Origin: Octopus sinensis
Taxonomy: Eukaryota
DNA length: 64,000 bases
Direction of reading: 5' to 3'
NCBI RefSeq assembly: GCF_006345805.1
Contig: NW_021833444.1
Coordinates: forward strand, 8,271-72,270
The translations under genes were made by a program, and so were the position numbers. Shown in pieces: positions 13,879 to 49,644 of the stretch. Under the pieces are notes generated by a model that was not told where the DNA came from, did not search any database, and saw only the letters and a list, made by a program, of their open reading frames with translations. Positions within the stretch are counted from its first letter, which is position 1. Each line of letters opens with the position of its first letter.

Positions 13879-14063
13879 CTAGTAGTACAGATTGAACTTG
13901 TTCTGAATTGGTTTGCAGCACATGTGGCACTCCTTCAAACTCTCTCCGCACTCTTTGCAAACGGTGTGACCACATTCAAACGCCATATTACGAGGGCGGT
14001 CCATGCAAATCGGACATGTAACCTTTTCTTCCAACTCTTCAATTCTTTTTTTCTGAGGATCAT
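13879..14063 (-). CDS. MIB2: MIB2-like exon 16 (short coiled coil, RING finger 2, stop)
   Basis: (Y)[60 protein letters not shown]; cattccag acceptor; TAG at 13881-13879. Confidence 0.95.
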
Positions 14064-14345
14064 CTGGAATGCAAAATATACAAGAAATATACGTCGACAC
14101 ACCTGAATGAACATCATAGGTGTATATATATACAAAAGTATTTGTTTGCATAAAATACTTTCAGAACAGATAGACAGGCAGATGAACAAAAAAGATTAAC
14201 AGAAAAATAGATAGAATGACGGTGTATGAGATTCCCATTTAGGCATATTGGCAGGACAGGGAAAAGACACACAGGCAGTGCCCTCGAAAGAACAGTTAAT
14301 AGAAGGGAAATAATCGCTTCTTCGTAATGTTTGGTGGGATATAAC

Positions 14346-14418
<73 letters not shown>

Positions 14419-14507: not shown

Positions 14508-16164
14508 TGATTTTTAATCTTACTTATGAAGTTCTAATTTAGCACAATTTCATTCTCTTTGGAAATCGTCTGCATAACACAACTTGATATAAATTAATTA
14601 AAGATTTGTTTCAAATATTTATCGAGAAAATATTTGACAACAAAATAAACAAATTGATATGTAGAATTATCAAACAACAAACAGATAAAGAGACATATTA
14701 ACAGACAGAGAATCAAATAGATAATGTATGCATTAAAAAAATATGACTTACAAATAGCAATTTTGTCGGCTATAAGCACTTTACACTGCAAGCAATGTTG
14801 AACTGGAACTCTTTCGTTGCAGACTTCACAGATCAATACGTGACAGCAAGGCTGGAACAATACAGTGGCCTGTTTAACAGAACACAGCATACACTTTCTA
14901 TTATTACTTTTTGGTTCTTCAATTTGTGCTCCACTTGGTTGTTCCGTTCTACGGAAGAAAAAAAATTAATCAGTTAAGAAAGGGATATTTACTAAAGCAG
15001 ACCAATAGATAAAACTTATTCGAGTATTAAATATTGTAGTTTATATAAATATTTCGTACATTGTATGTAAATAAAAATGGAAACGTCATGTGAAAAAAAA
15101 AGCCTTATAGAAACATTAGTGTATATTGAAGTTTTGGTATTTAAAAGTGTGTGCTATAAAACTCTGATCTTAAACCATGTAGCTGACTTGAAGTACTATG
15201 AGTTCTGGAATGTAAGTCGTCACTTGCCTAGCGTGTGTATATGTGATGGGTAGCAACGAAAGTTCATTAGAACCCTCTAAGTACAAACTTTTCTCAAGTT
15301 ATTTATTCGTACGTAATCGTAAAAAGGAAAGGTCTGTATTTACCTATTTATAGAGAACTTTAACTAGGCGAAGTATAACACTGATTGAGCCGATAACAGT
15401 TACTACTTCAAGGTTTTGTATTAGTGCTAGTATTTACACATAGGGTATAGAGACGTTGAAACACTTATAAAATGTTTTGTTTCACATTTAATATAAATAG
15501 CAAAAAATTTTAATAAATAGAACATTATGGATTTCACTAGTAAGTTTATAAATTATTTAAAAATTAAGTGGGTCGTCATAAACTGGTGTGATAAATAGTG
15601 GGTCGCGACTCTAAAAAGTTTGGGAACCACTGGGTTAGAGTGTCTGTGCCACAGTCAAGGATGTGCAATGAGGATGTAACTAGTTGATATATAAAATTAA
15701 GATTTATAAAAGGAAATCGATTATTGCTCTAACACAAACGGAATGTCACCCAAGATCAGATTTCTGATTGAAAATCATTTCATTTCTTCTTGCTAATAAT
15801 CTCAGACGGGAATCCCATTTTCACAAAGTACTCATAAAATAAAAACGAAATTTTCGGTTTTATCTTCAAAATTTAAGCAGGAGGCAATAAGTTTATTTTG
15901 CGAATGTCCTTGCATACTTACGATAAAGAGGCGACTTTCACCAGCATCTCTATCAATGTTTGATCGCTTATGATGTCCAAAGGCATAACATCTTGACGGT
16001 TTTTATAATAGGGGTTTGCACCTTTATGTACTAAATAACAGGCTATGACCACCTCAGCGCGTTCACTTTCGTCTAATCCAAGCTGAAGTTTAATCTGTAC
16101 ATCCAAGAAAATAGTAAAGAAAAAGTGGGTGAAAGTAAATAATACATTCATACACACACACACG

Positions 16165-16216
<52 letters not shown>

Positions 16217-16224
16217 CATATATA

Positions 16225-16315
<91 letters not shown>

Positions 16316-16401
16316 CATATATATATATATTATATATATATATATATAACTATATTGGTGATGCAAACAGGAAAACAGAACTCAGAATAAGTGTTATATA
16401 T

Positions 16402-16491
<90 letters not shown>

Positions 16492-16513
16492 ATATATATA
16501 TACATATATATAT

Positions 16514-16544
<31 letters not shown>

Positions 16545-16627
16545 CATACATACATATATATATATTATATTATATTATATATATATATATTATATATACA
16601 TACATACATATATATAATTATATATAT

Positions 16628-16701
<74 letters not shown>

Positions 16702-16805
16702 CATATATATATATATATTATATATATATATAACTATATTGGTGATGCAAACAGGAAAACAGAACTCAGAATAAGTGTTATATATATTATATATATATAT
16801 ATTAT

Positions 16806-16837
<32 letters not shown>

Positions 16838-16859
16838 GATATATAATATATATATATAT

Positions 16860-16922
<63 letters not shown>

Positions 16923-16971
16923 CATACATATATATAATATATATATATATATAGATATATAATATATATAT

Positions 16972-17038
<67 letters not shown>

Positions 17039-17265
17039 TATAAAACTATATTGGTGATGCAAACAGGAAAACAGAACTCAGAATAAGTGTTATATATTAT
17101 AATATATACATATGAAAGAATGTTTGAAAATGCAATTTTAAAAGATGTTTATTCACTTGACCGGTTTCACTTTTTTAGAAAAAGATTGTCAAAAGTAAAA
17201 TGTAAAGCTTTGTAAAAGCTTTGTTGTGTTAAGTACTAGTTATCACAACATATTGTAATACATAT

Positions 17266-17320
<55 letters not shown>

Positions 17321-20300
17321 TTTGATTATAATAAGAAAATGTTAAAACGGTTTACAAAGAAAAACTTTGAGAAAATATTAAAAAGTTCATTAAAAATATT
17401 AGGATTTCATTAAAAGTCATGTTTGTTTGGCAGTATCTATATATATATATATATACACAGAAAATTATAAGTCCAAAAAGGTCATATATTGATGGTATAT
17501 ATATATATACACAGAAGGAGATATATTTACCAGTTTACAACGAATTTGAGGTCAGTTCATCTCAAATTTCCACTCGTGCGACATCTTACAACTTTACTTT
17601 GTTATATATATATATATATATATATGGGATAGCGCATGTTTGCGAATCATCTACCAGCCTTGTAATAAGCCCCCATCTCTTCGCTAACACCTTGTCCAAA
17701 TTCTTAAAATTTCTGTTTACCAGAGTTAAGGGCCTAAAGTTGTCGATGACATGACCCTTGTTCGAGTCCTTTCTCAACAGCGTCACTACACCTCGGCTCA
17801 CAGAATTGGGAATCGTCCCGTTCTTTTGCCAATTGCAATATAACCTCTACAACAGATCACCGAACAGGTCTGATATATGAGTATAAAGCTCGAAGAGCAG
17901 ACCATCTAAACTCAACACCTGTTGCTTGTGAAGCTAGACATTGCCTCATCAGTATCTTCGGTTGTTATTGACATTACCATCCTTTCAGTTCCGTTACTAT
18001 CTGCTCAGTCCCAACTCTGTTTATTCAGTCCCATCGCTATCCGTTCTGTCCCAACTCTCTCAGTTCCGTTCTAACTCTATCTCTTCAATAATCCACTACT
18101 ACCCTTCCCCTGTCAGTTAAATATTCAGTTTTATCGTTATCTTTTCAGTCCCACATATACAGACATGCACGAATAAAATTTAGATGTCACTTACGTTTTC
18201 TATTATCTTTAAATCTTCTTTACTAATGCTGACATTTTGCTTTGAGACCGCCAAATGTAAGCAGATATTTCCATCTTCATCTTCGGCATTGACTTTAGCT
18301 CCTTTTGATATCAATAATTCAATTAAACCTATATGTCCCTGCGTCGCAGCCAGAAACAACGGCGTCTGACCACTATTGTTTTTAATGTCTATCTCTGCAC
18401 GGCCCTAAAAAAAATAAAGGCAGACACATTAGTGGTAATAAGTGGCATTGGTGATGGTAATGATGGTAGTGTTTTTGTTAGTAGCGGTGGAGTATGGTGA
18501 TGAGGATAGTGACAGGGATGATTATGGCAACGATAGTGTTGCTGATAGTGGTAGCGTAGAGAGTGACGGTGGTGGAGATGATGAGGATGGTAGGTATAAT
18601 GTAGTGAGTAGCTTTTTCCCAGTTCGAACGTGCCTCAAGCATATTTGGACTGATAATAGCATTACAATTTTATTTATAACTGCTTAGCGCTCTCTCTTTG
18701 TAATTTACTTGTCCAGGCAGCGTACTCGACTGCATGGTTATTAGGCTCATAAATTAACGTCAATGTTTGATTTGTAATTAAATAAAATAAAGTTTAACAG
18801 AAAGATTATAAAACCATCGCTTACCAATGAAAGGAGTGTGTCAGCAACTTCTCGGTGCCCATTCAAAGCAGCAAGATGTAATGCAGTAAAACCATCATCT
18901 TTCTTATCATTAACAATGTGTTGGCATTTTCGAAGAATACTTTCAATTGCACTGAAGAATGATGAAAATATTCGAGACAAAAGTATCATTAGAAAAATAA
19001 TTTAGCTTTGAAGTATTTGACGTATAGAGTTATAACGAGCTTACAAGAAGTATATATGGTGATAAAAGGTAATTTTGTGTTATCGGTTTTAATATAAGGA
19101 GTATAAGTAAATTAGTTAGAAATGCAGATGATGGCTTTGGGTAAAGGAAAATGCAGGAGGATCAGTTGATTATGATTTTATCCAATATATTTCCCTCTCA
19201 GATTTACACACTTATTGCAGTGGTCCTTCAGTTTTTCTGTAAAAGAACTCGATTGGGCCTCTGGCGTTCCCCTTTAAGCTAGGAACTTTTCAGTTTCCCC
19301 TTGTATAAATAGCCAATTGATATATAGAGGTCATAATTTATAGCCACTGAGTTTAAAAGCTCAATTGATAACACCATCATTAAATTCTAATGCAGTAAAT
19401 TATACGTTATTACAATGCAGGCATATACAGATATCGGCTGGCTGAAAAGTTTGCTGAGCGAAACATATCTGCAATAAAAAGTAGAAAAGGCATATATTTT
19501 ATATATAACTACTCATAATTATGAATTCTATGTGAAATCTATACTTTCCTGCTTTTATTCTAAATTTATCGACATACTTCTCTCATTTTCTCGGTATATG
19601 TGTGTGTGTGTGCGCATGTCTGTGTGCGTGTGTGTGTATACTTACATCTATCTATATATTAAAATTGAATTTCTGTTTGTCCGTCAACATTCAAGTAAAG
19701 TCAGCAAATCTGTAAGGAGAAGTCTCACCTTGGTTCAGATTCGAAACTGAATCTTTCAATTTTCCTTCGGCATACGATTTATTCAAACGTCAAAAGGAAC
19801 CGTGATAAATGAGTGTTTCATCTGACCTGTGACCTTTTCAGCGTCTTCGCAACTTCACTCACATGATGAGTCACCTGGATTGTTTTTTTATCAGTCAGCA
19901 TGAAAGTAAAGACAGCAAAAAATGTAGGAATTTTCTGACCCTGGTTCAGATTCGAAACTGAATCTTTCAATTCTCCTTGGGCGTAGGACCAATTCAAATC
20001 TCAAAAAAAAACTTCGAAAAGAACCGTGACAAATGGGTGTTCCACTTGACACGTGGCCTTTTCAGTCTCATCACACATTCACCTAGATTCGGTTGAGCTA
20101 ATGTTCTATATGATATAGCTATTTTCCTAGCTTGTCGGTTCAGATATAAATATACGAAATTCTTTCAGATAGGCAGAGAGAGCCCGACAGTAAAGTAAGA
20201 CGCACGGCACACACAGACAGAACTTGACAGGGAAAGAAAACATCGACACTCCTACAAAAAGACATTTCACATCAACAACATGCATTCCGACTCAAAGATT

Positions 20301-21432
20301 TAAAATAGATTTTATTTGATTATTACATACTGATATTCCTTATCAAAAAATGTCTCCTAAAAAAGGGCATCAAAAAACGAACGCCAAAGAAACGACGTAC
20401 TGCAGAAATAGAAAGTGAGAGACGCGCACGGCTTACAGATGACTGACAAAGAAAGAAAGCTCGACGTGCATCTGAATATATACAAGGGAAGAAATAAGAT
20501 GACACAACACAGATTTGTTTCAGAAGGCTAAAGAATATATTTAAATCGTTATGGTAAAAATATTATACAATATTATACAAAATAAGATCTTTTCTCTACC
20601 CAAATGACCGTTATCGCTGTAGCTTTTCAAACTATGAATGTGAGATACAATTTGAAAGGAGGTGGTCGTCCTAACTGTGGAACATGTCCCAATCTTTTTG
20701 AAGCATCAGATTTCCATTTTAAGCAAGGGCAAAAATTAAAAATTAAGTCCAATTTCACTTACGCCTCTGAAAATTTAAATTTATGTTATCAAATGCCTGG
20801 GAGGCCATAAAAACTGTATAGGCTCCACAGAAATGTCTTCTAGACGTAGATGCACAGTCCACAAACAGCAGATCTTTTTCGCACAATATCGCCAGATACA
20901 TCTCAGCGAACTCATTTACAGATGCGCAGGACAACTGCAACCACAATTCCTAATCTTTCCGTTATATAAATGTGCTGTTTAGATCTCAACACAAGTGTGA
21001 CTAAATGAATGCGGCTTTTATATATCGAAAATATAAGCCAGAAGTAAATATAAATCCATATTGAACATTACACAAGTATCACTAAATAAAGAGGCGACAC
21101 TTTTCGAAAATATAAACCAGAACTAAATATAAATTACAGATTTATCTCCCCTTTACTGAAAAACACCTTGGTTACCAATTATTCCCCACCCACCCAACCA
21201 ATAGAATTTCTCCCTTCCGATTGCATCTAACACTGAAGATTTGAAAAGTTGCATCGCTTGATTAGAGAAAAAAATCTTATTTATTGTAATATTGTATAAT
21301 ACTTTTCCCATAACGATTTAAATATATTCTCTAGTCTCGTAAAACAAATTTGTGCTTTTCATCTTATTTCTTCCCTTGTATATTCAACCACGTACAATCA
21401 CCAACTATACTTTCACACACACATTTATATGT

Positions 21433-21523
<91 letters not shown>

Positions 21524-23601
21524 TTTATTTAAAGCTGCAGAAAATTCAACAAAACCTGTTACTCTGAGTTTCACGTTGCCGTTCATCGGACAGTTTTTGC
21601 TAGAATATATATTATATATATATATATATGCGGATATACACGCTTTACACACACACGTGTGTGTGCCTCTGTGTGTTTGTGTCTGTGTGTACCCAAGTAG
21701 AGTTATAAAGAAATAGATAAAAGGAAACAAGTCTATAATTACGCTGTAAGCAAGCTACAACTAAGAATTCAACCTTATCGGGTAGAGCTGCTTGATCAAC
21801 AAAAGAAAAAAGTGATAAAAAAGGGGAAAATGTGGAGCAGAAAAATATTGCAAATTTCAGTAAAGCAGCGTAGTAAGCGGCAGATTAGAAGTTTGTAGAG
21901 TGGATGTATTGATAACTGTGTTTTGCAGGTAAAAGAGCAATAGTTAAGAGTGGCATAAGCAAGTGATGTGTGTGAAAATATACTGTCCTTCAGAAGGCAT
22001 TAGTAGACCCAGAGTTATGGCTGGAGACGCAATCCCAAGGTGCCGTACAATAGCATTCAACTTGAAACGGCATTGTTGCAAAACAAACGTTTTCGCCTTT
22101 CAGTTATGCTTGTTGCTAAAGTTTGGTTATATTAGTGATGTATTATAATTATAATAATTATAATTATGGTTTAGAAAATTAATAAACCTGAATTAATGAG
22201 AAATATTTAAGTGATGATGATAAACAATAGGCAATATAAATAAACGGGTACATATCTCTTCTTCTTTTACCCGCACGTAAGGGAGACAATTCAGGATTTG
22301 TTTTGGTATTATTGCGAGCTCCATGGTTCCTAAAGTTGTTCTGAAGGAATTACGGGAGAACTGTATGTTTAGGGAGTCCTTTATGCAACTTACGTCCTAA
22401 TCACGTCAAACTGAAGACCTGAAATTTGGTTGACGGAAACATTATAGAAGTTTCCTTGAGTGACTCTTGAGTGATCGTTTTAATATGTTACTATGTGATC
22501 ACTGAGAGTGTTTAACGTAATTTATACTGTTGTTTCGAGTAGTCGAGGCAGCTCTCAGTTTTGAGGAAAACATTGTTTTTTCCCTCCATGAAATCACAGG
22601 CGAACCTTCAGAAGATTCATCAAATTCATCATTTCCTCCCTGCCATCTCTGTCAAAGGTTCGTAAATACCGAAAAGGAGATTTATATTCTAAAGATATTG
22701 GTGTAGAATATATTTGGAAGATTTCTTTGAGTAGAAGCGATTTCATTTTTTTACAATATTTCGAAATAATGCGTTCAAGATTTTCATGCATAACAACAAC
22801 AAAACCCAACAATAACAATAATAATAATAATAATCCTTTCTAGTGGAAACACTAGAAGTACATAATTGGTACTTATTTAATCGACTCCGAAAGGATGAAA
22901 GGTAAAGTCTACCTCGGTGGAATTTGAAATCAGAACGTAGTGACGGGCGAAATGCCGCTAAGTATTTCGTCCAGCGTGCTAGCTATTCTGCCAGCTCGCC
23001 GCTTTAATGATAATGATTTAAATTTTTGCCGCAAGGGTAGCTTGTGGGAGGAGAGTAAGTCAATTATATCGAGCCCAGTGCGTAAATGGTACTTATTTAA
23101 TCGACACCAAAAGGATGAAAGGCCAAATCGACCTGCGCGGAATTTGAACTCAGAGAACGTAGCGACAGGCGAAATACCTCTTTCTTTACTACCCACAAGG
23201 GGCTAAACACAGAGAGGACAAACAAGGACAGACAAACGGATTAAGTCGATTATATCGACCCCAGTGCGTAAGTGGTACTTAATTTATCGACCCCGAAAGG
23301 ATGAAAGGCAAAGTCGACCTCGGCGTAATTTGAACTCAGAACGTAGCGGCAGACGAAATACCGCTGAGCATTTCACCGGGCGTGGTAACGATTCTACCAG
23401 CTTGCCGACTTAATAATGATAATAATAATATTTTTAAAAAAAAATTTTTTTTTTTTTATGTATTAGACATTCACTAGTACAACACCCCAAAAAAACCCCA
23501 AAAAAACAAATATATGGCACAGAACTTCCAACCTGTTGTCTCTTGAGGTCTCTGGGTGAGACTTGGAGCCAACTTGTACAGACATAAAGCAAAAGTCCAA
23601 C

Positions 23602-23665
<64 letters not shown>

Positions 23666-25332: not shown

Positions 25333-25367
<35 letters not shown>

Positions 25368-25833
25368 GTGAAGTAACATAGCGAGGAAAAGAAATCCTTC
25401 AAAGGGGTGCGTTAAACATTCAGTTCACTGGTACATCATTTGGATATCATATAAATATTGGTTTAATTCAATAATGAAGATAAATTAAATATAGAGATAT
25501 TCTGTTGACATTCAATAATTTATTTATATTACAATATTTCATTATATAACATAAAATAAAGCATAACATATGAATAATTATAAAAACCGTAAAAGGCCAA
25601 CAAATGGTTTCGACTCTCTTTTACTCTTTTACTCTTTTACTTGTTTCAGTCATTTGAATGTGGCCATGCTGGAGCACCGCCTTTATTCGAACAAATTGAA
25701 CCCAGGACTTCTTTGTAAGCCTAGTACTTATTCTATCGGTCTCTTTTGCCGAACCGCTAAGTATCGGGAACGTAAACACACCAGCATCGGTTGTCAAGTT
25801 ATGTTGTGAGGGGGGACAAACAAACACACAAAC

Positions 25834-25870
<37 letters not shown>

Positions 25871-26247: not shown

Positions 26248-26284
<37 letters not shown>

Positions 26285-26537
26285 AATGAGGGTGAAAGAT
26301 TGATATTAATTTAATAATACCATTAATTTAACACCGAGTGGCTTAGCACAAAAACTACGGAGAAAATACAAATTTATACATAAATTATTAGAGAGTTAAC
26401 CACTATGTGGATAACTCTAGTGCTAAAAATAGCTCCGATAGTATAGCCACAGAAAAAAGATGTTTCCAACTAGAAGTAACATACATTTAACGGAAATACT
26501 ATCGGAGCTATTTTTAGCACTAGAGTTATCCACATAG

Positions 26538-26622
<85 letters not shown>

Positions 26623-26623
26623 A

Positions 26624-40502: not shown

Positions 40503-40818
40503 ATTTATATACATGTGCATGTGCGTGCAAAAGTTATTATGTTTCGAAAATAAATGCACGATGATCACGTTTGAAACATGCTGATGGTATATCTGCTGGA
40601 TCAGGCTAAATGTTTGGGGAAGAAAACAATTCTGAAATATACTCACCGATACCATATCATCATTCCATCCGCCATGTCCTTCCTGTAACTTTTTAACTTC
40701 TTGAATGTCTTCAATTATCTTCACTGTATGACCAACGAGAAATTGATCATCCTGAAACATGGATAAGTAAAAGCAAAACATGCATATGTATGTGTGTACA
40801 TATATATATATATATATA

Positions 40819-41918: not shown

Positions 41919-44900
41919 TGTTGTTGTTGTTGTTGTTGTAGTATCATGAATGCATGTTTTCATTTGGATCGTAAAAAAACGAAAAATTTGTATTATAGAA
42001 ACGAGCCATGTCACGAGGGTTGGACTCAAAATGACATCTAAGATATCTAATAAAGTGACAAAAATTTACTTGTCCTTCAGAACCATCCACGATTCCGTGC
42101 AGGGATTGTAACAAGCTTCTGAAGTCAGGTGTCGCATTAAAAAACTGTTCCATCATCTCCATCATTGATGATGCTATAAAACGAAAGTTAATAAAACAAT
42201 CAATAAAAAGAAGTGTTCATTCATATTTATAGCAAAATCGCTGGAAAAATATTAAAAGGCAAGCAAAAGATTATTGAATTAATATAGAAAAGGCGTATGT
42301 TACAGAATGATCTTGTCGTTTTTGCTGTTGTTCGCTTTCAGCCTCAGCCAAAACTAATTGTGAAAAAATCCGATCAAAGTAGTTGCAAACTATGATAATG
42401 TCAATTCTTATGTATCAAAAAATACATTTTTCAATGATCTCTTCCTTTGTATGACGGCAGAGTTTAATTTTAAAATAGTTTACTTGCTATTTTCTAAAGA
42501 TCGTCCACCACACGATAACCAGTGATTCCGACCACCTTGGATATTTAGTCCCAGGTCAATCCTGGTTAAGCTAATGAAGCAGATATCCTAAGAGTAACGA
42601 CGGTCTAGCCTCATTATTCAACCAGTTTTAGTTTTCGAGCAATGTGGATCCGGGCCAACTGTATGCAATGTACTCTTTACGAAAACGTAATACTATTTGA
42701 GGAGATCCAGCTATTATGTCTAGTAGGCTGAATGAATATGTACATGGCGTATGTGGAAAGTCTTTGTACTGAAAGTGAAATTCCTCATAATTCCTCGAGG
42801 AATGCTTGGTAGATTTTGTTGATTTTACTTCTATAGCGCGGACCCAGACTTATCCAATCATTCACGGATTTTCTTGGAGTATTTTACTACTAGGCCACGT
42901 GTTTTCATAAATAAATAGAGAAGCAAGATTCAAGGACTTATATATTTCTGTGAAGGCTATGTACACATGAAGCAGCATTTTTAAAAAATGCCAAAAGTAG
43001 ATGAGTTCCTAAAGAATCAACGGCACCCGTATCCTGTGTTGTAGACAGGTACAATCATGATTACCAAGCCTGAAGGAACGTTTTAATAGAAGTTACACCA
43101 ATATCTAATTTTATACTATACTACTGAAATGTTCAAAGAAAATCCAAGAGTGAGTAGGGTTGAAAAGATTGGAAAAACAATCAATACAGCCCCACACATT
43201 ACGGCTTTTTTTACTACAACTGTAAAATTTCTCCCCAAGTTCACATCCCCGGTCTCAGAAACATGTACAGAAAAAACCCGGCAATTAATTAATACTCGCT
43301 ACTTTTATCCGCCATTCAAGAAAATTTCTTGCAGGACAGCGCATTCCTATTCACTCTCGCCTTCCACTTCAATTTCGACTTGGATTAACTTGACGGAAAT
43401 ATATCAGTCATCAATAATAGTTTCCACTCCAATTTTCTTCACAATCACCAGGTACATGGAAGATCTCTGCTCTTTCCTGCCAATTTAAAGACGTTCTTCA
43501 TATGACATCATCTATTTGACAAACACTACAATCTACAGTCAACACCCTGTTATCTAGTACTCCTATAACCAGAACTCTTAAGCAATCAGTACATAGAAAA
43601 GGGTAAAATAAACATTGTTAATTAGAGTCAATATGTACGAATTGTGTTAACTAACTAATCGTTATTAAAAGGTTTCTGTTGTGTTTAAAATGTTTCGTTG
43701 CTTCCCAAAGTATTGTAAAGTATTTTATTTTACTGCACTTTGAGTAGCTGTATTTTATTAGGTCAACAGAAATTATTAATTATTTAACTTATACTGTAAG
43801 TTCTTCCATTTTCTCACATTTCTACTATATTCAGAAAATTAATGAAATGGACGTATATAGCAGGTTTTAATGAATTTTTAAAGCATTATGGTAATTTAAA
43901 AAGTCGTGCTCAGATAACTTGAAAATTCAGTTATCGTCTGGTCCCAGTGATTCCGGATAGGAGGTAGTTTATTATTGGTGTATTTAAACACGGAATGAAT
44001 ACATGGTAATATCATTGCATTACTCCATGTGCAGCTCAGACGGAACAATCAGATAGCACTCCAGTAACTTATAATATAATAAATTCCAACGTAAGTTATC
44101 TTTTAAAATTGTGTAATCACAGAATTTTCAGACCTATAAGTGTTAATTCAATATAAATACAGAACTTTACATCATGTACCCCCATTTATATATCAATAAT
44201 AAGTGTGAAGGAAAACGAAGAAAAAACAGTTAAACTCACTAGCATCATCTTCTTCCCCAACTTTCATACTTTGGGGTACTTTTGTGCAGCACAGAGGGTT
44301 GAATAAAAATATTTTACCAGACACCGACACAAGCAAATCACCGTCTGGGAATGCAATTTTTATGGTACCAATTTTGCCTAATACCTACAAAGATACAAAC
44401 AACATGCTAAATGAAGTCAAACTGTAAATTTGATCCACGTCATATGAACAGGCTGAAAAAAAAATCATAAGGGATCAAATTAACGATATACATATCTATT
44501 TTTAATGGTTCAAAAGATAATGCTTGCGTCCATTACACATTTATGTACTTAGATATATATGTAAGTATTTCTAATCCAGAAACGCGTTCGTAAATAACCC
44601 TTAGACTTTGCTTTCGTTATTTCTTCCATCTGTTTTACATATGTGAATTACAGGGATATGTCGTATGTGGAGTCTCATTTGTAGAAAATAGAAATAAACA
44701 GTCTTTGACTGCTATTTCTAATTTTTTCGGTATGTGGCTAAGCAACATGTTGCTTGCCCCTTTTATTTATATACAAAAATATATATTGAACTTTTTTTTA
44801 TAAAAGTTCCTACCGTTAATGGTTATATTTACATGCCGAAATCTACCCGTAAATAATTGTTGGTTTAAAAAAAAAAACTATTCAAACTATTATTTACTCT

Positions 44901-45940
44901 TATTATATTACTACATGTAAGTATTATATATGTATATATATATATGTGTATATAAATATATATTCTTTTCTTCTTTTCTTCTTTTACTTGTTTCAGTCAT
45001 TTGTCTGTGTGTTGTGTTCCTGAGTATGACACTGTATTTCAAGTTGCTCCAGCTCACTCAGTTGTAGAAATGAGTTGCGACATCACTGCTGCTAAGCTGT
45101 AACGACCTTTGCCTTTCCCTCGGATAACATCGGTGGCGTAGAGTGTGGAGGTTGGTATGTATGGGTGACTGAAGGTCTTCCATTAAAATCAACCTTACCC
45201 AGACTTGTGCCTCGAAGGGTAACTTTTCACGGGCAATTCCATGGTCATTCATGGCCAAAGGGGTCTTTATTGTTTACTCGAGTACTATACTAAATGAATA
45301 AAGGATACCAAAGAAAATTAGACATTACATAACAGAAAAATTACAGAAATTGAAAATCAAATATCGTTTTTAGACGGTTGAACTGCAAGTAGAAAAGTTA
45401 TAAATGGTACACAAATATATGCATATATGCGTCCATTCGTATATCTATTTACATACTATGTCAAGAAAATAAAACATGACAGTTGTGGGTGAACCAACTT
45501 GCATCGTTTGTCGAGCAAATTAGGTATATTAGGAACTACACAACTTAAGAAATACACTCACCGATGTCATAACAGAAGTCCATCCACCATGATTAACCTG
45601 ATATCTTTTAACTTTTTCGGTATCATCAAGTATCCTAACTGCATCTCCAACGTTAAATTTGTCGATCTGAAACAGAGAAATTTAATGAGATATAACATAA
45701 GAAAGTAAGAGAGGAGGAGGAGAGAGGGAAAGTTTTGAGTGTGGGAGTGGGTTTCAAGAAAAAAGAGTGATTTACGAGAAGGCGTAGTTGAAGGAGGAAG
45801 AGAGAGAGGGGGGGAAAGAAAGAAAGAACGAAAGAAAAAGAAAGTTAGAATGAATGAAAGAATGAAAGAAAGAATAAATGAATAACTGAGAGAAAGAAAG
45901 AAAGAAAGACAGAAATAGGAACGATAGCTAGCCAGCTAGC

Positions 45941-46015: not shown

Positions 46016-48289
46016 TTCAAATTCCGCCGAGGTCGACTTTGCCTTTCATCCTTTCGGGGTAGATTAATTAAGTACCAGTTACGCACTGCGGTCGATATAA
46101 TCGACTTAATCCGTTTGTCTGTCCTTCTTTGTCCTCTCTGTGTTTTGTTCCTTGTGGGTAGTAAAGAAATAGGTATTTCTTCTGCCGCCACGTTCTGAGT
46201 TCAAAGCCCGCCGACTTTGCTTTTCGTCCTTTCGAGGTCAACAGTACCAATTAAGTGCTGGGGTCGATGTAATCGACTATCCCCCGCCCCCAAATTTCAG
46301 GCCTTGTTTCTATAGTAAAAAGGATTACTTATCCGTTGATTCTGTAGTGTTACCCTGATGAACGAGAGAATATTTCACTGAGAAATATGGTAATCTATCT
46401 CACGGACAATAAACATTGTTAGTCATAGTAATTTTGCTTCTACCCCATAACTGGATGAAGTAAAAGTAATGACAGGCTTCAATATTCCACTCCACCCACC
46501 TACTCTACCCAAAGACAGAGCACACTGGAAAGAAGCATGCATCAGATCCAAAACCAAAATCAGGGTATTGTAAGCAACTAGTTCTTTTGTCACTTAGATT
46601 AGTTACCATATTGTTGAACCATACTGCTTAGCAGAGAAGAAGGTTTGCTGGTGTAAGCCACTCGGTGTAAGCTTGTTGTCAGTGTACGAGGGGCGTTCAA
46701 TAAGTAATGCCCCTGACCCGCTTCCCATAGCAGTAGAGCAACGAAACTTGACCACAGTTATTAGTCTTTTTCTACATAGGAACCACCCAGAGTTACGCAT
46801 TTCTCCCATCGTTTGATGCAGCTCTGGGGACCGTTTTTGTAGAAGAACCCAGCTTGGTCCTCCACCTCAACGTGACTTCAGAAATCAAGGCTGCATCATC
46901 TGGGAAACGCTTTCCTTTCAAAAACAACTTCATGATTGGGAAGAGGTGAAAATCAGAGGGTGCAAGGTCAGGAAAGTAGGGGGGATGGGGAGGACTTCAT
47001 AGCCATACGCCTGTGCTTCTGATCTGGCGACAAGCGAGTTGTGGACCGGAGCGTTGTCCTGCAGGAGGAGGATGTCTTTGCTGATCTTGCCCCGCCTCTT
47101 GATTTTGATAACTTCTCTTAATTTCCTCAAAAGTGAAGCATAATAGGCTCCTGCAATTGTGGTACCCTTTGCCAGGAAATCTGTCATCACTACTCCGTCC
47201 TGGTCCCAGAAGACTGTGAGTATGATCTTGCCAGCGGAGTGCTGCACCCTTGCCTTCTTTGGAGGGGGTGAGTCACGGTGCTTCCACTGCATTGACTGGG
47301 CTTTGGTCTCTGGATCATCGTGATGGACCCAGGTTTCATCCTGTGTAATCAGTCTTTTGAGACATTTTGAATCATCTTCTTGGCACATCTCCAAATTCAC
47401 CCTCGAGCACTCGACGCGCTCTTGCTTCTGGAAAGGCGTGAGCAGCCTGGGAATCCATCTGGCAGACACCTTTTGCATATGCAAATGGTCATGAATGATA
47501 GTTTCCACAGACCCGGTACTAATCTTGACCTCATGGGCTATTTGGCGAATAATTATGCGTCGATCTTCCAAAATGGCAGCCTCAACTTGACGGACAGATG
47601 CCTCATCAATGGCAGAAGGGGGCGACCAGATCTGGGAGCTGTTTCCACAGAGTTCCGACCATGTTTGAATTCACGATGCCAGCGTTTTACAAGGTCATAT
47701 GATGGGGCATCATCACCATAAGTTACTTTCATTTCATCAAAAGTCTCCCGTGGTGTGCGTCCTTTCAAATACAAAAACCGGATCACTGCTCGACACTCAA
47801 CAGGCTCCATTTCACACTTGACTCGGTTCAAACACCTGTAAATCAGAAACCACAATTAATTCAGAGATGTAGTTTGCCACTTACTCTATAGAGATATAAA
47901 TGATTGCACATACAAAATTTCAGCTGGATCAAACAACTGCAAGTGGGTCAGAGGCATTACTTATTGAACGTCCCTCATAATATTGTGGAAGTAAGTTTAT
48001 CCAAGGAAAACGCCATGAAGCAGACAAGTTTTATTAATTGTAAAACATTTAAGCCATATTGGTAAAAAATATTATAAACGTAGAAGGTACTGAATGTTAC
48101 GGAGATTAGACCTTATATACTGACCTTTGTGAGAGCTTTTGGATTAAAGCGCCATAATTTGTTACCAAGTTCTTCAAATTTCACAATCACATCGTCGACA
48201 TTATTAAGTCCTTGAACTATGCCAACTTGACCTATAAACTGAATATAAAGTGGGTTAACAAATATTGTACATACATACATGCATACATT

Positions 48290-48321
<32 letters not shown>

Positions 48322-49644
48322 CATACATACATACATACATACATGATGGCTGCCCACTCTTTATCGAGTATGGCCATTGCACGAAGCTTAACTGTTACTG
48401 GTGCTGTGATCGAATGTGACTTTTTAGCCCAGCTACATACATACATACATACATACATACATACATACATACATACACACGCATGTTATGTATTCAAATG
48501 TATATATGTGCCACATGAACGGGGAAAAAACAATTCCAAACATACAATAAGATATATGGCGTATTTAAAATGAATTCGGTTCTCAGCACCAAATTTCACA
48601 GCACCGCGATTTTCAGACAAGAACTGCTATATTTGTTTCATTATTTTCCTATTAAATTTATACTTATAAATGTGCATTCGTTGTTTTCTACATCTTTTTA
48701 CAATCAAAAGGCGTAAGATAACAGGTATAAACTGATGGCTATGGGAGACCAGATTCACCCAGTAAATGTGGCAAGAAATGAAAGAAAAAATATTCATATT
48801 CATCAGAATATGCCACCCATCTCCAACGTTTTAGGATAATTTATTTGTGCTATAAAAGAAGATAAAATAAAGGAAAATAAATTTTGATGAAACATATATG
48901 GTAGCAATTCTGTAAATTTACAATGACATATTGTAGTGGTTGTGTGGTAAGTAGCTTGCTTACCAGCCACATGGTTCCGGGTTCAGTCCCACTGCGTGGG
49001 ACATTGGGCAAGTGTCTTCTACTATAGCCTCGGGCCGACCAAAGCCTTGTGAGTGGATTTGGTAGACGGAAACTGAAAGAAGCCCGTCGTATATATGCAT
49101 ATATATGTGTGCGTGTATGTTTGTGTGTCTGTGTTTGTCCCCCTAGCATTGCTTGACAACCGATGCTGGTGTGTTTATGTCGCCGTCACTTAGCGGTTCG
49201 GCAAAAGAGAATCGATAGAATAAGTACTGGGCTTACAAAAGAATAAGTCCCGGGGTCGATATGCTCGACTAAAGGCGGTGCTCCAGCATGGCCGCAGTCA
49301 ACTGACTGAAACAAGTAAAAGAGTAAAGAAAAAGAGAGAGATATTTTCTTACAAAATTGTCATACTTCCGGCAGTTGGTTTCCTTTTCGTGGCTACTGCA
49401 CTGTAGTCACTTAGTAATAGTAACCGTTCAACCAGTGATAGCTGTTTATGCATGTATGTATATATTTCGCTATCTATCAGTGACCTTATAGCATAATGAA
49501 AATACACAAGCCAGTACTTACGTTTACCATAAAAGGAGTCCATCCGCCATGTCCTTCTTGTAACAACTTTACAGTATTTATGTCTTCAGATAGAGATACT
49601 CGGTCTCCTGCGTTGAATACACTGGTAGATGCGTTGGAATCCAT
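13879..49644 (-). CDS. MIB2: Mind bomb 2-like E3 ubiquitin ligase, 16 coding exons, 774 aa (3x MIB/REP repeat, ~9 ankyrin repeats, 2 RING fingers; no MZM module)
   Basis: Hand-spliced exons 49644-49522, 48238-48125, 45666-45562, 44384-44240, 42173-42070, 40751-40647, 33138-32997, 30232-30099, 29236-29088, 27131-26975, 25000-24846, 18951-18825, 18404-18195, 16094-15922, 14948-14752, 14063-13879. All introns are GT-AG with matching phases; the sum is 2325 nt with no internal stop. Family recognised from GHGGW REP motifs, the ankyrin run ([29 protein letters not shown]) and two RINGs. The symbol denotes the family; orthology to the canonical mib2 is not established. Confidence 0.9.
14752..14948 (-). 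CDS. MIB2: MIB2-like exon 15 (RING finger 1)
   Basis: [65 protein letters not shown]; C3HC4 spacing; tcttccgtag / gtaagt; phase 2-1. Confidence 0.93.
15922..16094 (-). CDS. MIB2: MIB2-like exon 14 (last ankyrin repeat)
   Basis: [57 protein letters not shown](S); gtacag / gtaagt; phase 0-2. Confidence 0.88.
16170..17100. repeat. (TA)n array carrying three identical 47-bp cassettes
   Basis: aactatattggtgatgcaaacaggaaaacagaactcagaataagtgt at 16348, 16732 and 17044. Confidence 0.9.
17626..17925 (-). mobile_element. Tx1/L1-like LINE RT fragment
   Basis: [41 protein letters not shown]...QTCAIP (N-terminal RT motifs). Confidence 0.8.
18195..18404 (-). CDS. MIB2: MIB2-like exon 13 (ankyrin)
   Basis: [70 protein letters not shown]; tttttttag / gtaagt; phase 0-0; 210 nt. 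Confidence 0.95.
18825..18951 (-). CDS. MIB2: MIB2-like exon 12 (ankyrin)
   Basis: [42 protein letters not shown]; ttcttcag / gtaagc; phase 2-0. Confidence 0.95.
20600..21000 (+). mobile_element. Older Penelope-like GIY-YIG remnant
   Basis: [38 protein letters not shown], then after a frameshift IYVIKC...[20 protein letters not shown]...FLIFPLYK. Confidence 0.65.
21551..21598 (-). ncRNA. Minimal type-I hammerhead motif (U4C core variant)
   Basis: ctgt CCGATGA acg-gcaa-cgt GAAAC tc-a-ga GTA acag: stem II closed by a GNRA loop, palindromic stem III, stem I ctgt/acag. Confidence 0.7.
22590..22820 (-). mobile_element. Penelope-like RT-thumb/linker remnant
   Basis: [16 protein letters not shown]...[20 protein letters not shown] resembles the linker preceding the PLE endonuclease. 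Weak and judged by eye. Confidence 0.4.
24846..25000 (-). CDS. MIB2: MIB2-like exon 11 (ankyrin)
   Basis: [51 protein letters not shown](F); attttcag / gtaagt; phase 0-2; absent from the ORF track. Confidence 0.95.
26975..27131 (-). CDS. MIB2: MIB2-like exon 10 (ankyrin)
   Basis: [52 protein letters not shown]; ttattttag / gttagt; phase 2-0. Confidence 0.95.
28408..28925 (+). mobile_element. 3' end of an RLE-type (R4/Dong-like) non-LTR retrotransposon inside (AAT)n
   Basis: [16 protein letters not shown]...[49 protein letters not shown] (restriction-like endonuclease), 3' UTR, then (AAT)n tail. An older copy lies at about 27670-27960. Confidence 0.8.
29088..29236 (-). CDS. MIB2: MIB2-like exon 9 (ankyrin)
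   Basis: [49 protein letters not shown](G); ccacag / gtatgt; phase 0-2. Confidence 0.95.
30099..30232 (-). CDS. MIB2: MIB2-like exon 8 (linker and first ankyrin helix)
   Basis: (E)[44 protein letters not shown]; ttatatag / gtaagc; phase 1-0. Confidence 0.9.
30317..31079 (+). mobile_element. Internally deleted mariner (both TIRs, C-terminal transposase remnant)
   Basis: Left TAcgatgtgacatcaaaacgttccctgact matches the reverse complement of right agttcgggaaccttttgataccacctcgTA. Remnant reads [50 protein letters not shown]. Confidence 0.85.
32997..33138 (-). CDS. MIB2: MIB2-like exon 7 (REP repeat 3, second half)
   Basis: [47 protein letters not shown]; tttgtttgtag / gtaagt; phase 0-1; 142 nt. 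Confidence 0.9.
34985..37483. repeat. About 2.5-kb spacerless inverted repeat centred at 36233/36234
   Basis: ...gctagtctatacat|atgtatagactagc...; arms match along their length with scattered small indels. Confidence 0.9.
35004..35054 (-). ncRNA. Type-I hammerhead motif in a Penelope-type terminal repeat
   Basis: agcttc CTGAAGA tttctcttgaat GAAAC agtactagtcct GTA gaagct: 6-bp stem I, near-palindromic stem III, weak stem II. Further copies at 37415-37464 (+), 37593-37646 (-, core altered) and 39893-39941 (+, 1-nt deletions). Confidence 0.7.
39270..39705 (-). mobile_element. Penelope-like element GIY-YIG endonuclease fragment
   Basis: [21 protein letters not shown] (frameshifted) followed by [37 protein letters not shown]; flanked by hammerhead-bearing repeats. 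Confidence 0.85.
40647..40751 (-). CDS. MIB2: MIB2-like exon 6 (REP repeat 3, first half)
   Basis: [35 protein letters not shown]; tgtttcag / gtgagt; phase 0-0; 105 nt. Confidence 0.92.
42070..42173 (-). CDS. MIB2: MIB2-like exon 5 (linker; degenerate copy of exon 8)
   Basis: (T)[34 protein letters not shown]; gttttatag / gtaaat; phase 1-0, which bridges exons 4 and 6. Confidence 0.8.
44240..44384 (-). CDS. MIB2: MIB2-like exon 4 (REP repeat 2, second half)
   Basis: [48 protein letters not shown]; ctttgtag / gtgagt; phase 0-1; 145 nt. Confidence 0.9.
45562..45666 (-). CDS. MIB2: MIB2-like exon 3 (REP repeat 2, first half)
   Basis: [35 protein letters not shown]; tgtttcag / gtgagt; phase 0-0; 105 nt; absent from the ORF track. 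Confidence 0.9.
46687..47977 (-). mobile_element. Full-length (1291 bp) Tc1/mariner transposon, transposase inactivated by frameshifts
   Basis: TIRs cgaggggcgttcaataagtaatgcccctgaccc and gggtcagaggcattacttattgaacgtccctca with TA duplications. [13 protein letters not shown]..., [26 protein letters not shown] and a frameshifted [14 protein letters not shown] (DD34D). Confidence 0.95.
48125..48238 (-). CDS. MIB2: MIB2-like exon 2 (REP repeat 1, second half)
   Basis: [38 protein letters not shown]; attcag / gtcagt; phase 0-0; 114 nt. Confidence 0.92.
48933..49329 (+). mobile_element. tRNA-derived SINE, family A, near full length
   Basis: A/B boxes (tggttgtgtgg, ggttcagtccc), body gccgaccaaagccttgtgagtggatttggtagacggaaactg, tail gctccagcatggcc...aaaagagt. 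Other copies or fragments at 2345-2510, 3425-3625, 25615-26033 (-), 53090-53255 (-), 54520-54635, 63700-63890. Confidence 0.85.
49522..49644 (-). CDS. MIB2: MIB2-like exon 1 (start codon; REP repeat 1, first half)
   Basis: [44 protein letters not shown] in AAACAATGG context with in-frame TAA two codons upstream (49650-49648). Acceptor ttgtttcag at 49669-49668; donor gtaagt; phase 0. Confidence 0.8.

What the first reader, a model, noticed from the sequence alone, without database searches (positions are those of the whole stretch)
13879..49644. Mind bomb paralog lacking the MZM module and carrying three REP repeats
Seen: a complete 774-aa ORF begins at a strong-context ATG (AAACAATGG) preceded by an in-frame TAA, runs directly into REP1, then REP2, REP3, about 9 ankyrin repeats and two RINGs with an unusually short inter-RING linker. 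No MIB-Herc2 or ZZ exon was found in the 14 kb upstream. Established: canonical MIB1/MIB2 have MIB-Herc2-ZZ-MIB-Herc2 (MZM) plus two REP repeats, and MIB1 binds Notch-ligand tails bipartitely through MZM and REP. Inference: losing MZM while multiplying REP should rewire substrate choice, giving a lineage-specific ligase or a competitor of canonical Mind bomb in Notch or innate-immune signalling.
Basis: partly seen in the sequence, partly recalled or inferred. Interest (0 to 1): 0.72.

Follow-up and report, generated by a model that had tools for sequence, protein, structure and literature searches.

The report
Octopus Mind bomb-2 paralog without MZM
This is a real, intact octopus-specific copy of the Mind bomb-2 ubiquitin ligase gene that has lost its usual substrate-binding head, gained a third REP repeat and lost a key catalytic arginine; it is already in RefSeq as a predicted "MIB2-like" gene and is a moderately interesting gene-family variant.

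Summary
On the minus strand, 16 exons with GT-AG introns (49644 to 13879) splice into a 774-aa protein. It is identical to RefSeq XP_029656287.1 (Octopus sinensis "MIB2-like isoform X1"). Pfam finds three SH3_15 (REP) units, the ankyrin block and two RINGs, but no MIB_HERC2 or ZZ.

Orthologues with the same 16 exons and the same start exist in O. vulgaris and O. bimaculoides. A profile of the MZM head finds nothing in the window or in the 10 kb upstream in those species.

New here:
- The third REP arose by an in-frame tandem duplication of three exons (REP2 plus the following linker).
- The gene belongs to a monophyletic group of MZM-less octopus paralogs nested inside cephalopod MIB2.
- It evolves about 20 times faster than canonical MIB2 but is still constrained (dN/dS 0.43).
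- The linchpin arginine of the catalytic RING, present in 118 of 122 relatives, is Cys or Ser only here.

My best reading is a REP/ANK-based binder with weakened ligase activity that modulates or competes with canonical Mind bomb. That function is inferred, not shown, and I found no transcript evidence. REP multiplication turns out to be common in other lineages. Interest is moderate to low.

The parts
49645..49667 (-). Probable 5'-untranslated start of the first coding exon, preceded by a likely splice acceptor (ttgtttcAG at 49669-49668). It contains the in-frame TAA (49650-49648).
   Evidence: O. sinensis / O. bimaculoides conservation begins abruptly at GCTTGTTTCAG|GTGAATTT... and is poor further upstream. 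Sequence read directly. In O. bimaculoides the TAA is GAA.
49522..49644 (-). Exon 1: ATG and the first half of REP1 (aa 1-41).
   Evidence: same exon in O. vulgaris and O. bimaculoides.
48125..48238 (-). Exon 2: second half of REP1 (aa 42-79).
   Evidence: REP1 = aa 8-80; 46% identical to canonical REP1.
45562..45666 (-). Exon 3: first half of REP2 (aa 80-114). First exon of duplicated block A.
44240..44384 (-). Exon 4: second half of REP2 (aa 115-162).
   Evidence: REP2 = aa 81-151; 56% identical to canonical REP2.
42070..42173 (-). Exon 5: degenerate, shortened copy of the post-REP linker exon (aa 163-197). Predicted flexible.
   Evidence: Aligns with exon 8 and with the canonical post-REP2 linker. 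pLDDT 31-43. 15 non-synonymous against 1 synonymous difference to O. bimaculoides.
40647..40751 (-). Exon 6: first half of REP3 (aa 198-232). First exon of duplicated block B.
32997..33138 (-). Exon 7: second half of REP3 (aa 233-279).
   Evidence: REP3 = aa 199-269; 52% identical to canonical REP2, 49% to REP2 of this gene.
30099..30232 (-). Exon 8: linker and the helices leading into the ankyrin domain (aa 280-324).
15922..29236 (-). Exons 9-14 (29236-29088, 27131-26975, 25000-24846, 18951-18825, 18404-18195, 16094-15922): ankyrin-repeat domain (aa 325-647).
   Evidence: Pfam Ank families. Colinear with the MIB1 ANK crystal construct 8v0e. pLDDT 95-98. dN/dS 0.27.
14752..14948 (-). Exon 15: RING1, with Zn ligands C667, C670, C682, H684, C688, C691, C700, C703.
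13879..14063 (-). Exon 16: short coiled coil (aa 716-728), RING2 (homologue of MIB1 RING3) and the stop codon. The linchpin-position codon at 13917-13915 encodes Cys instead of Arg.

Best explanation
Shown. This is a functional-looking, octopus-lineage paralog of Mind bomb-2. It descends from a duplicate of canonical MIB2 that lost the exons for the MZM head (MIB/HERC2-ZZ-MIB/HERC2). That loss is shared by a whole cluster of MZM-less octopus paralogs. The gene then gained a third REP by an in-frame tandem duplication of three exons: REP2 first half, REP2 second half and the post-REP linker (354 and 381 nt). The predicted layout is REP1-REP2, a roughly 45-aa flexible tether, REP3, the ankyrin domain, RING1, a 26-aa spacer and a coiled-coil RING2. 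The linchpin arginine of RING2 is replaced by Cys or Ser.

Inferred. Without MZM the protein cannot use the bipartite MZM+REP grip on Notch-ligand tails, nor the MZM-dependent grip on RIPK1-type partners. It must therefore bind partners through its diverged REPs and its well-conserved ankyrin domain. RING2 keeps all Zn ligands, the hydrophobic E2-contact positions and the coiled coil that drives dimerisation, but the lost linchpin should weaken its ability to activate E2~Ub. It most likely acts as a weak ligase or non-catalytic partner that competes for REP/ANK ligands or pairs with canonical MIB2. In other words, it is probably a modulator rather than a stand-alone strong ligase.
For: Anatomy:
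- The 774-aa, 16-exon model equals RefSeq XP_029656287.1.
- O. vulgaris and O. bimaculoides have the identical exon structure and start.
- Pfam gives SH3_15 x3, Ank and RING x2, with no MIB_HERC2 or ZZ.
- There is no MZM signal in the window or within 10 kb upstream in two other species, while a control profile finds 15/16 exons.
- An in-frame TAA lies 3 nt upstream of the ATG, inside the same exon.

Duplication:
- Exons 3-5 and 6-8 both align end to end with canonical REP2 plus linker.
- REP2 and REP3 are each closest to canonical REP2 (56% and 52%); REP1 is closest to canonical REP1.
- 60 of 60 canonical MIB2 proteins have exactly two REPs.
- Paralogs P0135, P0079 and P0137 share the three-unit layout.

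Descent:
- The MZM-less octopus clade is monophyletic in 200/200 bootstraps and sits inside octopus canonical MIB2 plus a related transcript, also 200/200.

Constraint:
- dN/dS is 0.43 overall, 0.27 in ANK and 0.29 in RING2.
- The dN/dS departure from neutrality has Fisher p = 1e-7, and neutral simulation expects about 14 stops.

Fold:
- AlphaFold mean pLDDT is 86. The three REPs, ANK and both RINGs are confident; the exon-5 linker scores below 50.

Catalysis:
- The residue after the last Zn cysteine is Arg in 118 of 122 relatives. The only four exceptions are products of this gene.
- The alignment to PDB 8v0d places it at MIB1 R996.
- R996 hydrogen-bonds UbcH5B, and ccRING3 alone carries MIB1 activity and dimerisation (bioRxiv 10.1101/2024.03.01.582834).
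- RNF38 with linchpin Arg changed to Ser has minimal activity (PMC12326332).

Analogy:
- Drosophila Mib1 lacking MZM is dominant-negative and this depends on REP (PMC11887331).
- The MIB2 MZM region is necessary and sufficient for RIPK1 binding (PMC5912950).
Against: - I found no transcript or protein evidence. No Logan transcript fragment clusters with this protein, so expression rests on gene predictions.
- A conserved probable splice acceptor 23 nt upstream of the ATG implies at least one upstream exon that I could not locate.
- In O. bimaculoides those 23 nt contain no in-frame stop.
- Linchpin identity modulates RING activity but does not always abolish it (PMC12326332), so loss of activity is an inference.
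- dN/dS of 0.43, with REP3 near 1, also fits a gene under weak constraint.
- 14-16 of the 36 positions that are >=90% conserved in canonical REP1, and 5-9 of the 23 in REP2, are changed. Even REP-mediated binding of the canonical ligands is therefore uncertain.
Confidence: 0.55

Rival explanations
1. Neofunctionalised active ligase. The protein is a fully competent E3 that uses its three diverged REPs and the ankyrin domain to recruit a new, octopus-specific set of substrates. The Cys/Ser at the linchpin position is tolerated, or compensated by another residue or a different E2.
For: All Zn ligands of both RINGs, the hydrophobic E2-contact positions and the coiled coil are kept, and RING2 has dN/dS 0.29. 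The REP surfaces have diverged at many otherwise conserved positions while the fold is kept. Linchpin identity varies among active human RINGs (PMC12326332).
Against: Arg at this position is invariant in the other 118 MIB2-type proteins examined and is lost only here, to two different small residues in sister species. That pattern suggests relaxed rather than redirected constraint at this site. In RNF38, Arg-to-Ser leaves minimal activity.
Confidence: 0.28
2. Slowly decaying duplicate. The gene is a young, weakly constrained copy in a tandem cluster, with little or no function. It has been kept open so far by residual constraint.
For: It evolves about 20 times faster than canonical MIB2: 85.8% against 99.3% amino-acid identity between O. 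sinensis and O. bimaculoides. dN/dS is about 1 in REP3 and above 1 in exon 5. The linchpin is lost. Sister paralogs are visibly degenerate: P0079 lacks half of two REPs and both RINGs, and P0131 has only RING1. No transcript evidence was found.
Against: The ORF and all 30 splice sites are intact in three species at dS 0.165. Neutral simulation gives a mean of 14 stops and 0 of 2000 open frames. ANK and RING2 have dN/dS below 0.3.
Confidence: 0.12
3. Truncated gene model. MZM-coding exons lie further upstream than the 10-14 kb that could be examined, and they splice into exon 1, so the real protein is a canonical MIB2 with an extra REP.
For: A conserved probable acceptor 23 nt upstream of the ATG indicates an upstream exon. 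Cephalopod introns here reach 11.5 kb. The scaffold ends 14.3 kb upstream. O. bimaculoides has no in-frame stop between the acceptor and the ATG.
Against: In O. sinensis and O. vulgaris an in-frame TAA sits between the acceptor and the ATG. Three annotations start at the same ATG. There is no MZM signal in the collinear upstream DNA of three species. All members of the paralog clade lack MZM and have their own short N-termini.
Confidence: 0.05

Closest known systems
Canonical Mind bomb-2 (MIB2; here octopus P0003, 921 aa)
   Same: It shares descent, nesting in the cephalopod MIB2 clade. It is 51% identical over REP-ANK-RING. The ankyrin domain is colinear. It has two RINGs with the CHMC motif, a coiled coil before the last RING, and the same REP exon split.
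   Different: It has no MZM head. It has three REPs instead of two. The inter-RING spacer is 26 aa against 40 aa. The linchpin Arg is replaced by Cys or Ser. Protein evolution is about 20 times faster.
Mind bomb-1 (MIB1), structurally characterised (PDB 8v0d ccRING3-UbcH5B, 8v0e ANK)
   Same: RING2 aligns with MIB1 RING3 (E 1.6e-13), and the ANK domain aligns with the 8v0e construct. The hydrophobic E2-contact and coiled-coil positions are conservatively kept.
   Different: MIB1 has three RINGs, the MZM head and Arg996. In MIB1 the MZM/REP region is required for ligand binding.
Engineered Drosophila Mib1 lacking MZM (PMC11887331)
   Same: The architecture matches in principle: REP-ANK-RING without MZM. 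That construct acts as a dominant negative and this depends on REP.
   Different: It is an artificial deletion of Mib1, not a natural MIB2 paralog. It keeps two REPs and a normal catalytic RING.
Other octopus MZM-less MIB2-like paralogs (P0131/XP_029651627, P0079/CAI9741121, P0135, P0137)
   Same: They form one monophyletic clade with this gene (200/200). P0079, P0135 and P0137 share the three-REP layout. P0079 lies on the same O. vulgaris chromosome as the orthologue of this gene, about 0.33 Mb away.
   Different: They are 46-51% identical. They are more degenerate: they lack RING2 or both RINGs or parts of REPs. P0131 and P0079 begin with MG....
Multi-REP (SH3_15) proteins of other lineages (amphioxus XP_035664890 with 14 matched stretches, Paulinella, the jellyfish Sanderia, MZM + 4 REP transcripts)
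   Same: REP copy number above two.
   Different: The domain contexts are unrelated (Neuralized, PH, or MZM retained). They are not close relatives of this gene.

Membership tests
Mind bomb (MIB1/MIB2) E3 ligases | N-terminal MZM module (MIB/HERC2 - ZZ - MIB/HERC2) | tested here: not met
   Pfam finds no PF06701 or PF00569 in the protein. tblastn and a 60-sequence MZM profile find no significant match (only chance-level hits, E > 4) in the window on either strand or in the 10 kb upstream in O. vulgaris and O. bimaculoides.
Mind bomb (MIB1/MIB2) E3 ligases | Tandem REP (SH3_15) repeats, two in canonical members | tested here: met
   Three SH3_15 units at aa 8-80, 81-151 and 199-269. 60 of 60 canonical MIB2 proteins have two. 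The count therefore differs, but the domain is present.
Mind bomb (MIB1/MIB2) E3 ligases | Central ankyrin-repeat domain colinear with that of MIB1/MIB2 | tested here: met
   Pfam Ank families. Near-gapless alignment (two small gaps, 5 and 1 aa) with octopus MIB2 across the ANK block and with the MIB1 ANK structure 8v0e. pLDDT 95-98.
Mind bomb (MIB1/MIB2) E3 ligases | C-terminal C3HC4 RINGs, the last preceded by a coiled coil (two RINGs = MIB2 type) | tested here: met
   zf-C3HC4_3 x2. All Zn ligands are present. A helix at aa 716-728 precedes RING2. RING2 aligns with MIB1 RING3.
Mind bomb (MIB1/MIB2) E3 ligases | Linchpin arginine after the last Zn cysteine of the catalytic RING (MIB1 R996) | tested here: not met
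   Cys763 in O. sinensis and O. vulgaris, Ser in O. bimaculoides. Arg in 118 of 122 relatives.
Mind bomb (MIB1/MIB2) E3 ligases | Phylogenetic placement within the MIB2 clade | tested here: met
   NJ tree on 524 REP-ANK columns: the gene groups inside octopus canonical MIB2 plus a related transcript in 200/200 bootstraps. This was distance-based only; no ML tree was made.
Mind bomb (MIB1/MIB2) E3 ligases | E3 ubiquitin ligase activity and binding of Notch-ligand tails | not testable with these tools
   Needs biochemistry.

The most novel reading that the evidence does not exclude
Octopuses carry a small tandem family of natural 'anti-Mind-bomb' proteins. These MZM-less, REP-amplified paralogs have a disabled catalytic RING. 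They would heterodimerise with canonical MIB2 (or MIB1) through the coiled-coil RING, or sequester REP/ANK ligands. That would make them endogenous dominant-negative regulators of Mind bomb-dependent signalling (Notch-ligand activation or cell-death/innate-immune pathways), much like the engineered Drosophila Mib1 lacking MZM.
Probability: 0.15. Interest if true: 0.55.

Novelty: new variant of a known kind. Interest (0 to 1): 0.3.

Why it matters
If this paralog is expressed and acts as inferred, it would be a natural experiment on how Mind bomb ligases divide labour between MZM, REP, ANK and the catalytic coiled-coil RING. It would show that the REP-ANK part has a function of its own. It would also give an evolved example of a dominant-negative or pseudo-ligase regulator in a pathway (Notch-ligand activation, TNF/RIPK1-type signalling) that is otherwise highly conserved.

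It also offers a clean, datable example of domain gain by in-frame multi-exon duplication.

As it stands, this is a lineage-specific paralog with domain loss. Such paralogs are common in invertebrate E3 families, and the gene is already present as an automatic annotation.

Tried and rejected
- Locus look-ups for canonical octopus MIB2 (P0003, P0012), intended to compare exon structure and dN/dS, found no record. Only an amino-acid yardstick (99.3% identity) could be used.
- The exact look-up of RefSeq isoform X2 (P0001) also failed.
- Two further word-indexed protein searches with the N-terminal 324 aa and 197 aa, aimed at transcript-derived fragments and relatives in other cephalopods, returned only octopus paralogs and distant REP proteins. 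Expression and distribution outside Octopus therefore remain open.
- Comparing upstream DNA between species gave only collinear blocks at roughly neutral identity (74-93%). It did not single out a 5' non-coding exon or promoter.
- The structural paper on the MZM/REP-JAG1 complex (PMC4355479) is not held. REP ligand-contact residues could not be checked one by one, so I used conservation of >=90%-conserved canonical positions instead.
- A first tree and a first profile build timed out and were redone with faster settings.
- I considered and rejected an assembly artefact or haplotig-only gene, because the gene sits on chromosome-level assemblies of two other species.
- I considered and rejected a pseudogene.
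- I did not run fold searches, because the sequence-level matches to MIB1 structures were already unambiguous.


Full report
**1. What is in the sequence**

The feature lies on the minus strand. Stop-free segments carrying REP, ankyrin and RING motifs can be joined by 15 introns. All 15 have canonical AG acceptors and GT donors, mostly GTAAGT or GTGAGT. The result is a 2325-nt CDS of exactly 774 codons, from the ATG at 49644 to the stop at 13881-13879.

The start context is TATAAACAATGG, with an in-frame TAA at 49650-49648.

Pfam finds three SH3_15 ('Mind bomb SH3 repeat', REP) units, the ankyrin families and two zf-C3HC4_3 RINGs. It finds no MIB_HERC2 or ZZ.

**2. It is an annotated gene with conserved orthologues**

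The protein is identical to RefSeq XP_029656287.1, 'E3 ubiquitin-protein ligase MIB2-like isoform X1' of Octopus sinensis. It sits on the unplaced scaffold VCDQ01005199.1 of 72,270 bp.

The window is the last 64 kb of that scaffold. The 14.3 kb upstream of the ATG is therefore all that this assembly holds.

Two orthologues lie on chromosome-scale assemblies:
- O. vulgaris CAI9741126.1: 774 aa, 98.7% identical.
- O. bimaculoides XP_014786080.1: 772 aa, 85.8% identical.

I mapped each protein back onto its locus. All three genes have the same 16 exons with the same lengths, apart from 3-nt differences in exons 5 and 16.

**3. Is the N-terminus complete?**

- tblastn with the first 250 aa of canonical octopus MIB2 (E<=10, word size 2) gives nothing in the window and only three chance-level matches (E 5.8-8.8) in the O. 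bimaculoides locus.
- A profile HMM built from the MZM regions of 60 canonical MIB2 proteins, run with all filters off against every stop-free segment of at least 12 aa, gives no hit in the window on either strand. It gives no hit in the 10 kb upstream of the O. vulgaris and O. bimaculoides genes either. Its only two matches (E about 4-5) lie elsewhere, in paralog locus L003 and on the opposite strand inside the O. vulgaris gene. A control profile of the REP-to-RING part recovers 15 of 16 exons in each locus.
- Aligning the three species upstream of the ATG shows that O. sinensis / O. bimaculoides conservation starts abruptly at GCTTGTTTCAG|GTGAATTTGTATTTGTA(T/G)AAACAATGG. Further upstream it is poor.

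I read that boundary as a splice acceptor (AG at 49669-49668) 23 nt before the ATG. At least one upstream exon probably exists. In O. sinensis and O. vulgaris, however, the in-frame TAA lies inside these 23 nt, so such an exon cannot add coding sequence in frame. In O. bimaculoides the codon is GAA and the 23 nt are open; there the argument rests on the annotation and on the absence of MZM signal.

The upstream 10-14 kb is collinear between species at roughly neutral identity and shows no obvious conserved exon. I found no transcript-derived sequence for this gene. The transcript 5' end is therefore inferred, not seen.

**4. Where the third REP comes from**

Exon lengths and phases suggested that exons 3-4-5 (105+145+104 = 354 nt) and exons 6-7-8 (105+142+134 = 381 nt) are two copies of one unit.

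Both blocks align end to end with canonical 'REP2 + post-REP linker'. The alignment includes the linker motif S-M/L-x-E/D-M/L-L/M-E/Q-Q/K-F/L-F/L-N.

Unit-by-unit identities:

| Unit in this gene | Compared with | Identity |
|---|---|---|
| REP1 | canonical REP1 | 46% |
| REP2 | canonical REP2 | 56% |
| REP3 | canonical REP2 | 52% |
| REP2 | REP3 of this gene | 49% |

All 60 canonical MIB2 proteins examined have exactly two units.

The extra REP is therefore an in-frame tandem duplication of three exons. The upstream copy of the linker exon (exon 5) was shortened and has degenerated.

AlphaFold2 (mean pLDDT 86) models three confident REP barrels, a very confident ankyrin domain, both RINGs and a helix before RING2. 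Residues 156-198 (exon 5) fall below pLDDT 50. Exon 5 also has 15 non-synonymous against 1 synonymous difference between O. sinensis and O. bimaculoides. It looks like a flexible tether between a REP1-REP2 pair and a REP3-ANK body.

**5. Family context**

Octopus genomes hold further MZM-less MIB2-like genes: P0131/P0011 and P0136 in O. sinensis, and P0079, P0134, P0135 and P0137 in O. vulgaris. P0079 lies on the same O. vulgaris chromosome as the orthologue of this gene, about 0.33 Mb away.

An NJ tree on 524 REP-ANK columns gives these results:
- The MZM-less octopus proteins are monophyletic (200/200).
- They sit inside a clade with canonical octopus MIB2 and one related transcript-derived protein (200/200).
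- They are sister to canonical octopus MIB2 (146/200).

P0135, P0079 and P0137 carry the same three-unit REP layout. Their units 2 and 3 match REP2 and REP3 of this gene respectively. Both the MZM loss and the duplication therefore predate the radiation of this cluster.

No paper in the held library mentions these genes.

**6. Constraint**

Nei-Gojobori estimates for O. sinensis against O. bimaculoides are dS 0.165, dN 0.072 and dN/dS 0.43. By region, ANK is 0.27, RING2 0.29, REP1 and REP2 about 0.5, and REP3 about 1.

The deficit of non-synonymous change is significant (Fisher p = 1e-7). Random substitution at the synonymous rate would introduce about 14 stops; 0 of 2000 simulations stayed open.

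Canonical MIB2 is 99.3% identical between the same two species, against 85.8% for this gene. The gene is not a pseudogene, but it is under much weaker constraint than its parent.

Of the positions that are at least 90% conserved in canonical proteins, the paralog keeps 20-22 of 36 in REP1, 17-18 of 23 in REP2 and 14 of 23 in REP3. The fold is kept while the surfaces have changed.

**7. The RINGs**

Both RINGs keep all eight Zn ligands. The spacer between them is 26 aa, the shortest of 115 proteins (minimum 29 and median 42 among the others). The 'short linker' remark is therefore correct.

The more telling point is the residue after the last Zn cysteine of the terminal RING. It is Arg in 118 of 122 MIB2-type proteins collected. 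The only exceptions are the products of this gene: Cys763 in O. sinensis and O. vulgaris (codon 13917-13915) and Ser in O. bimaculoides.

The alignment to the UbcH5B-MIB1 RING3 structure 8v0d puts this residue at MIB1 R996 and at the linchpin Arg of BIRC7. Three published points bear on this:
- In MIB1, RING3 with its coiled coil is the only RING needed for ubiquitin transfer and it drives dimerisation. MIB2 RING2 is its homologue, and R996 hydrogen-bonds UbcH5B (bioRxiv 10.1101/2024.03.01.582834).
- In RNF38, replacing the linchpin Arg gives anything from minor loss to abolition of activity. Arg-to-Ser leaves minimal activity (PMC12326332).
- The coiled-coil and hydrophobic E2-contact positions of this gene match canonical octopus MIB2.

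**8. How it most likely works**

Shown: the architecture, the descent, the duplication mechanism, the constraint and the linchpin loss.

Inferred:
- MIB1 grips Notch-ligand tails through MZM (N-box) plus REP (C-box), and the MZM contribution dominates in vivo (PMC11887331).
- The MIB2 MZM region is necessary and sufficient for RIPK1 binding (PMC5912950).
- This protein therefore cannot use those modes. It must rely on its REPs and ANK.

With an intact dimerisation element but a probably weakened catalytic RING, it most plausibly acts as a modulator or competitor. It could be a weak ligase, a decoy for REP/ANK ligands, or a partner in heterodimers with canonical MIB2. The REP-dependent dominant-negative behaviour of Drosophila Mib1 lacking MZM is a direct experimental analogue.

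The rivals are:
- A fully active ligase with new substrates.
- A slowly decaying duplicate.
- A truncated gene model (unlikely).

**9. Comparison and novelty**

By descent this is a MIB2 paralog. By architecture it fails two features of canonical Mind bomb proteins: the MZM head and the linchpin Arg.

Extra REPs are not exceptional in a wider view. A profile of the three REP units searched against 1.84 billion representative proteins finds many proteins with 3 to 14 REP units. Among those checked are amphioxus proteins (one with a Neuralized domain), a Paulinella protein, and a jellyfish MIB-like protein and transcript-derived proteins with MZM plus four REPs.

The gene itself is already in RefSeq. 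What is new is the reading of its anatomy: the three-exon duplication, the clade-wide MZM loss and the linchpin loss. I rate it a new variant of a known kind, of moderate to low interest, with a modest chance of being a natural antagonist of Mind bomb signalling.

Noticed in passing
window 8666-12333: A 3.7-kb degenerate minisatellite of CACCACCAC-type units (periods 9, 15 and 30). GC is 0.55-0.64 with very strong C-over-G skew. It produces long spurious ORFs in several frames and lies about 1.5 kb downstream of the gene's stop codon.
   Followed up: partly
window 46933-47855 (minus), inside intron 2: Remnant of a mariner/Mos1-type transposon: HTH_48 (E 7.6e-10) and Transposase_1 (E 1.8e-22) in separate frames, on the same strand as the gene. 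Further mariner-like fragments appear near 30.4-30.9 kb and 33.5-33.75 kb by eye; the 33.5-kb piece gave no Pfam hit.
   Followed up: partly
window 50500-52455 (plus), 0.9-2.8 kb upstream of the ATG: Broken hAT / 'zinc finger MYM-type 1-like' element (DUF4371 pieces, E 4e-5 to 1e-4, below Pfam's cut-off). It is present in O. vulgaris, but the stretch has no match in O. bimaculoides. An O. vulgaris paralog model (P0137) fuses such domains to REP exons, probably a mis-merged annotation.
   Followed up: partly
window 35010-37459, inside intron 6: A large palindrome: arms 36105-36233 and 36234-36362 are 100% complementary with no spacer, and weaker arms extend to about 35010 and 37459. Intron 6 is 7.5 kb here but only 0.9 kb in O. 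vulgaris. It could be a real inverted duplication or a long-read fold-back assembly artefact.
   Followed up: partly
window 7605-8549 (minus) and 57411-58897 (minus): Retroelement and Tc1-like fragments: RT_RNaseH_2 (E 1.6e-8) at 8172-8549; a weak Tc3-type HTH at 57411-57656; and a YVDD-containing ORF at 58370-58897 with no Pfam hit.
   Followed up: partly
L001 (O. bimaculoides CM046626.1, 2.51-2.58 Mb): The orthologue lies entirely within the span of a cytochrome P450 gene model (621 aa) on the opposite strand. No P450-like ORF was seen in the window.
   Followed up: no
O. sinensis scaffolds of 31,487 and 32,003 bp (proteins P0125, P0127 and isoforms): Two further partial gene models (247-291 aa) are at least 90% identical to the N-terminal REP region of this protein. 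One has a frameshifted tail. They may be uncollapsed haplotypes or very recent duplicates.
   Followed up: no
window 42173 region (exon 5 acceptor): RefSeq isoform X2 (773 aa) lacks one Ser of the TCATCA pair at the start of exon 5. No AG lies 3 nt downstream, so an acceptor shift does not explain it. It may reflect an indel polymorphism in the supporting reads.
   Followed up: no
paralogs P0131 (O. sinensis) and P0079 (O. vulgaris, L003): Sister MZM-less paralogs begin with MGAAEST... / MGATQST..., which resembles an N-myristoylation signal. They lack the catalytic RING2: P0131 keeps only RING1 and P0079 has none. The protein in this window starts MDSNAST and has no Gly2.
   Followed up: no
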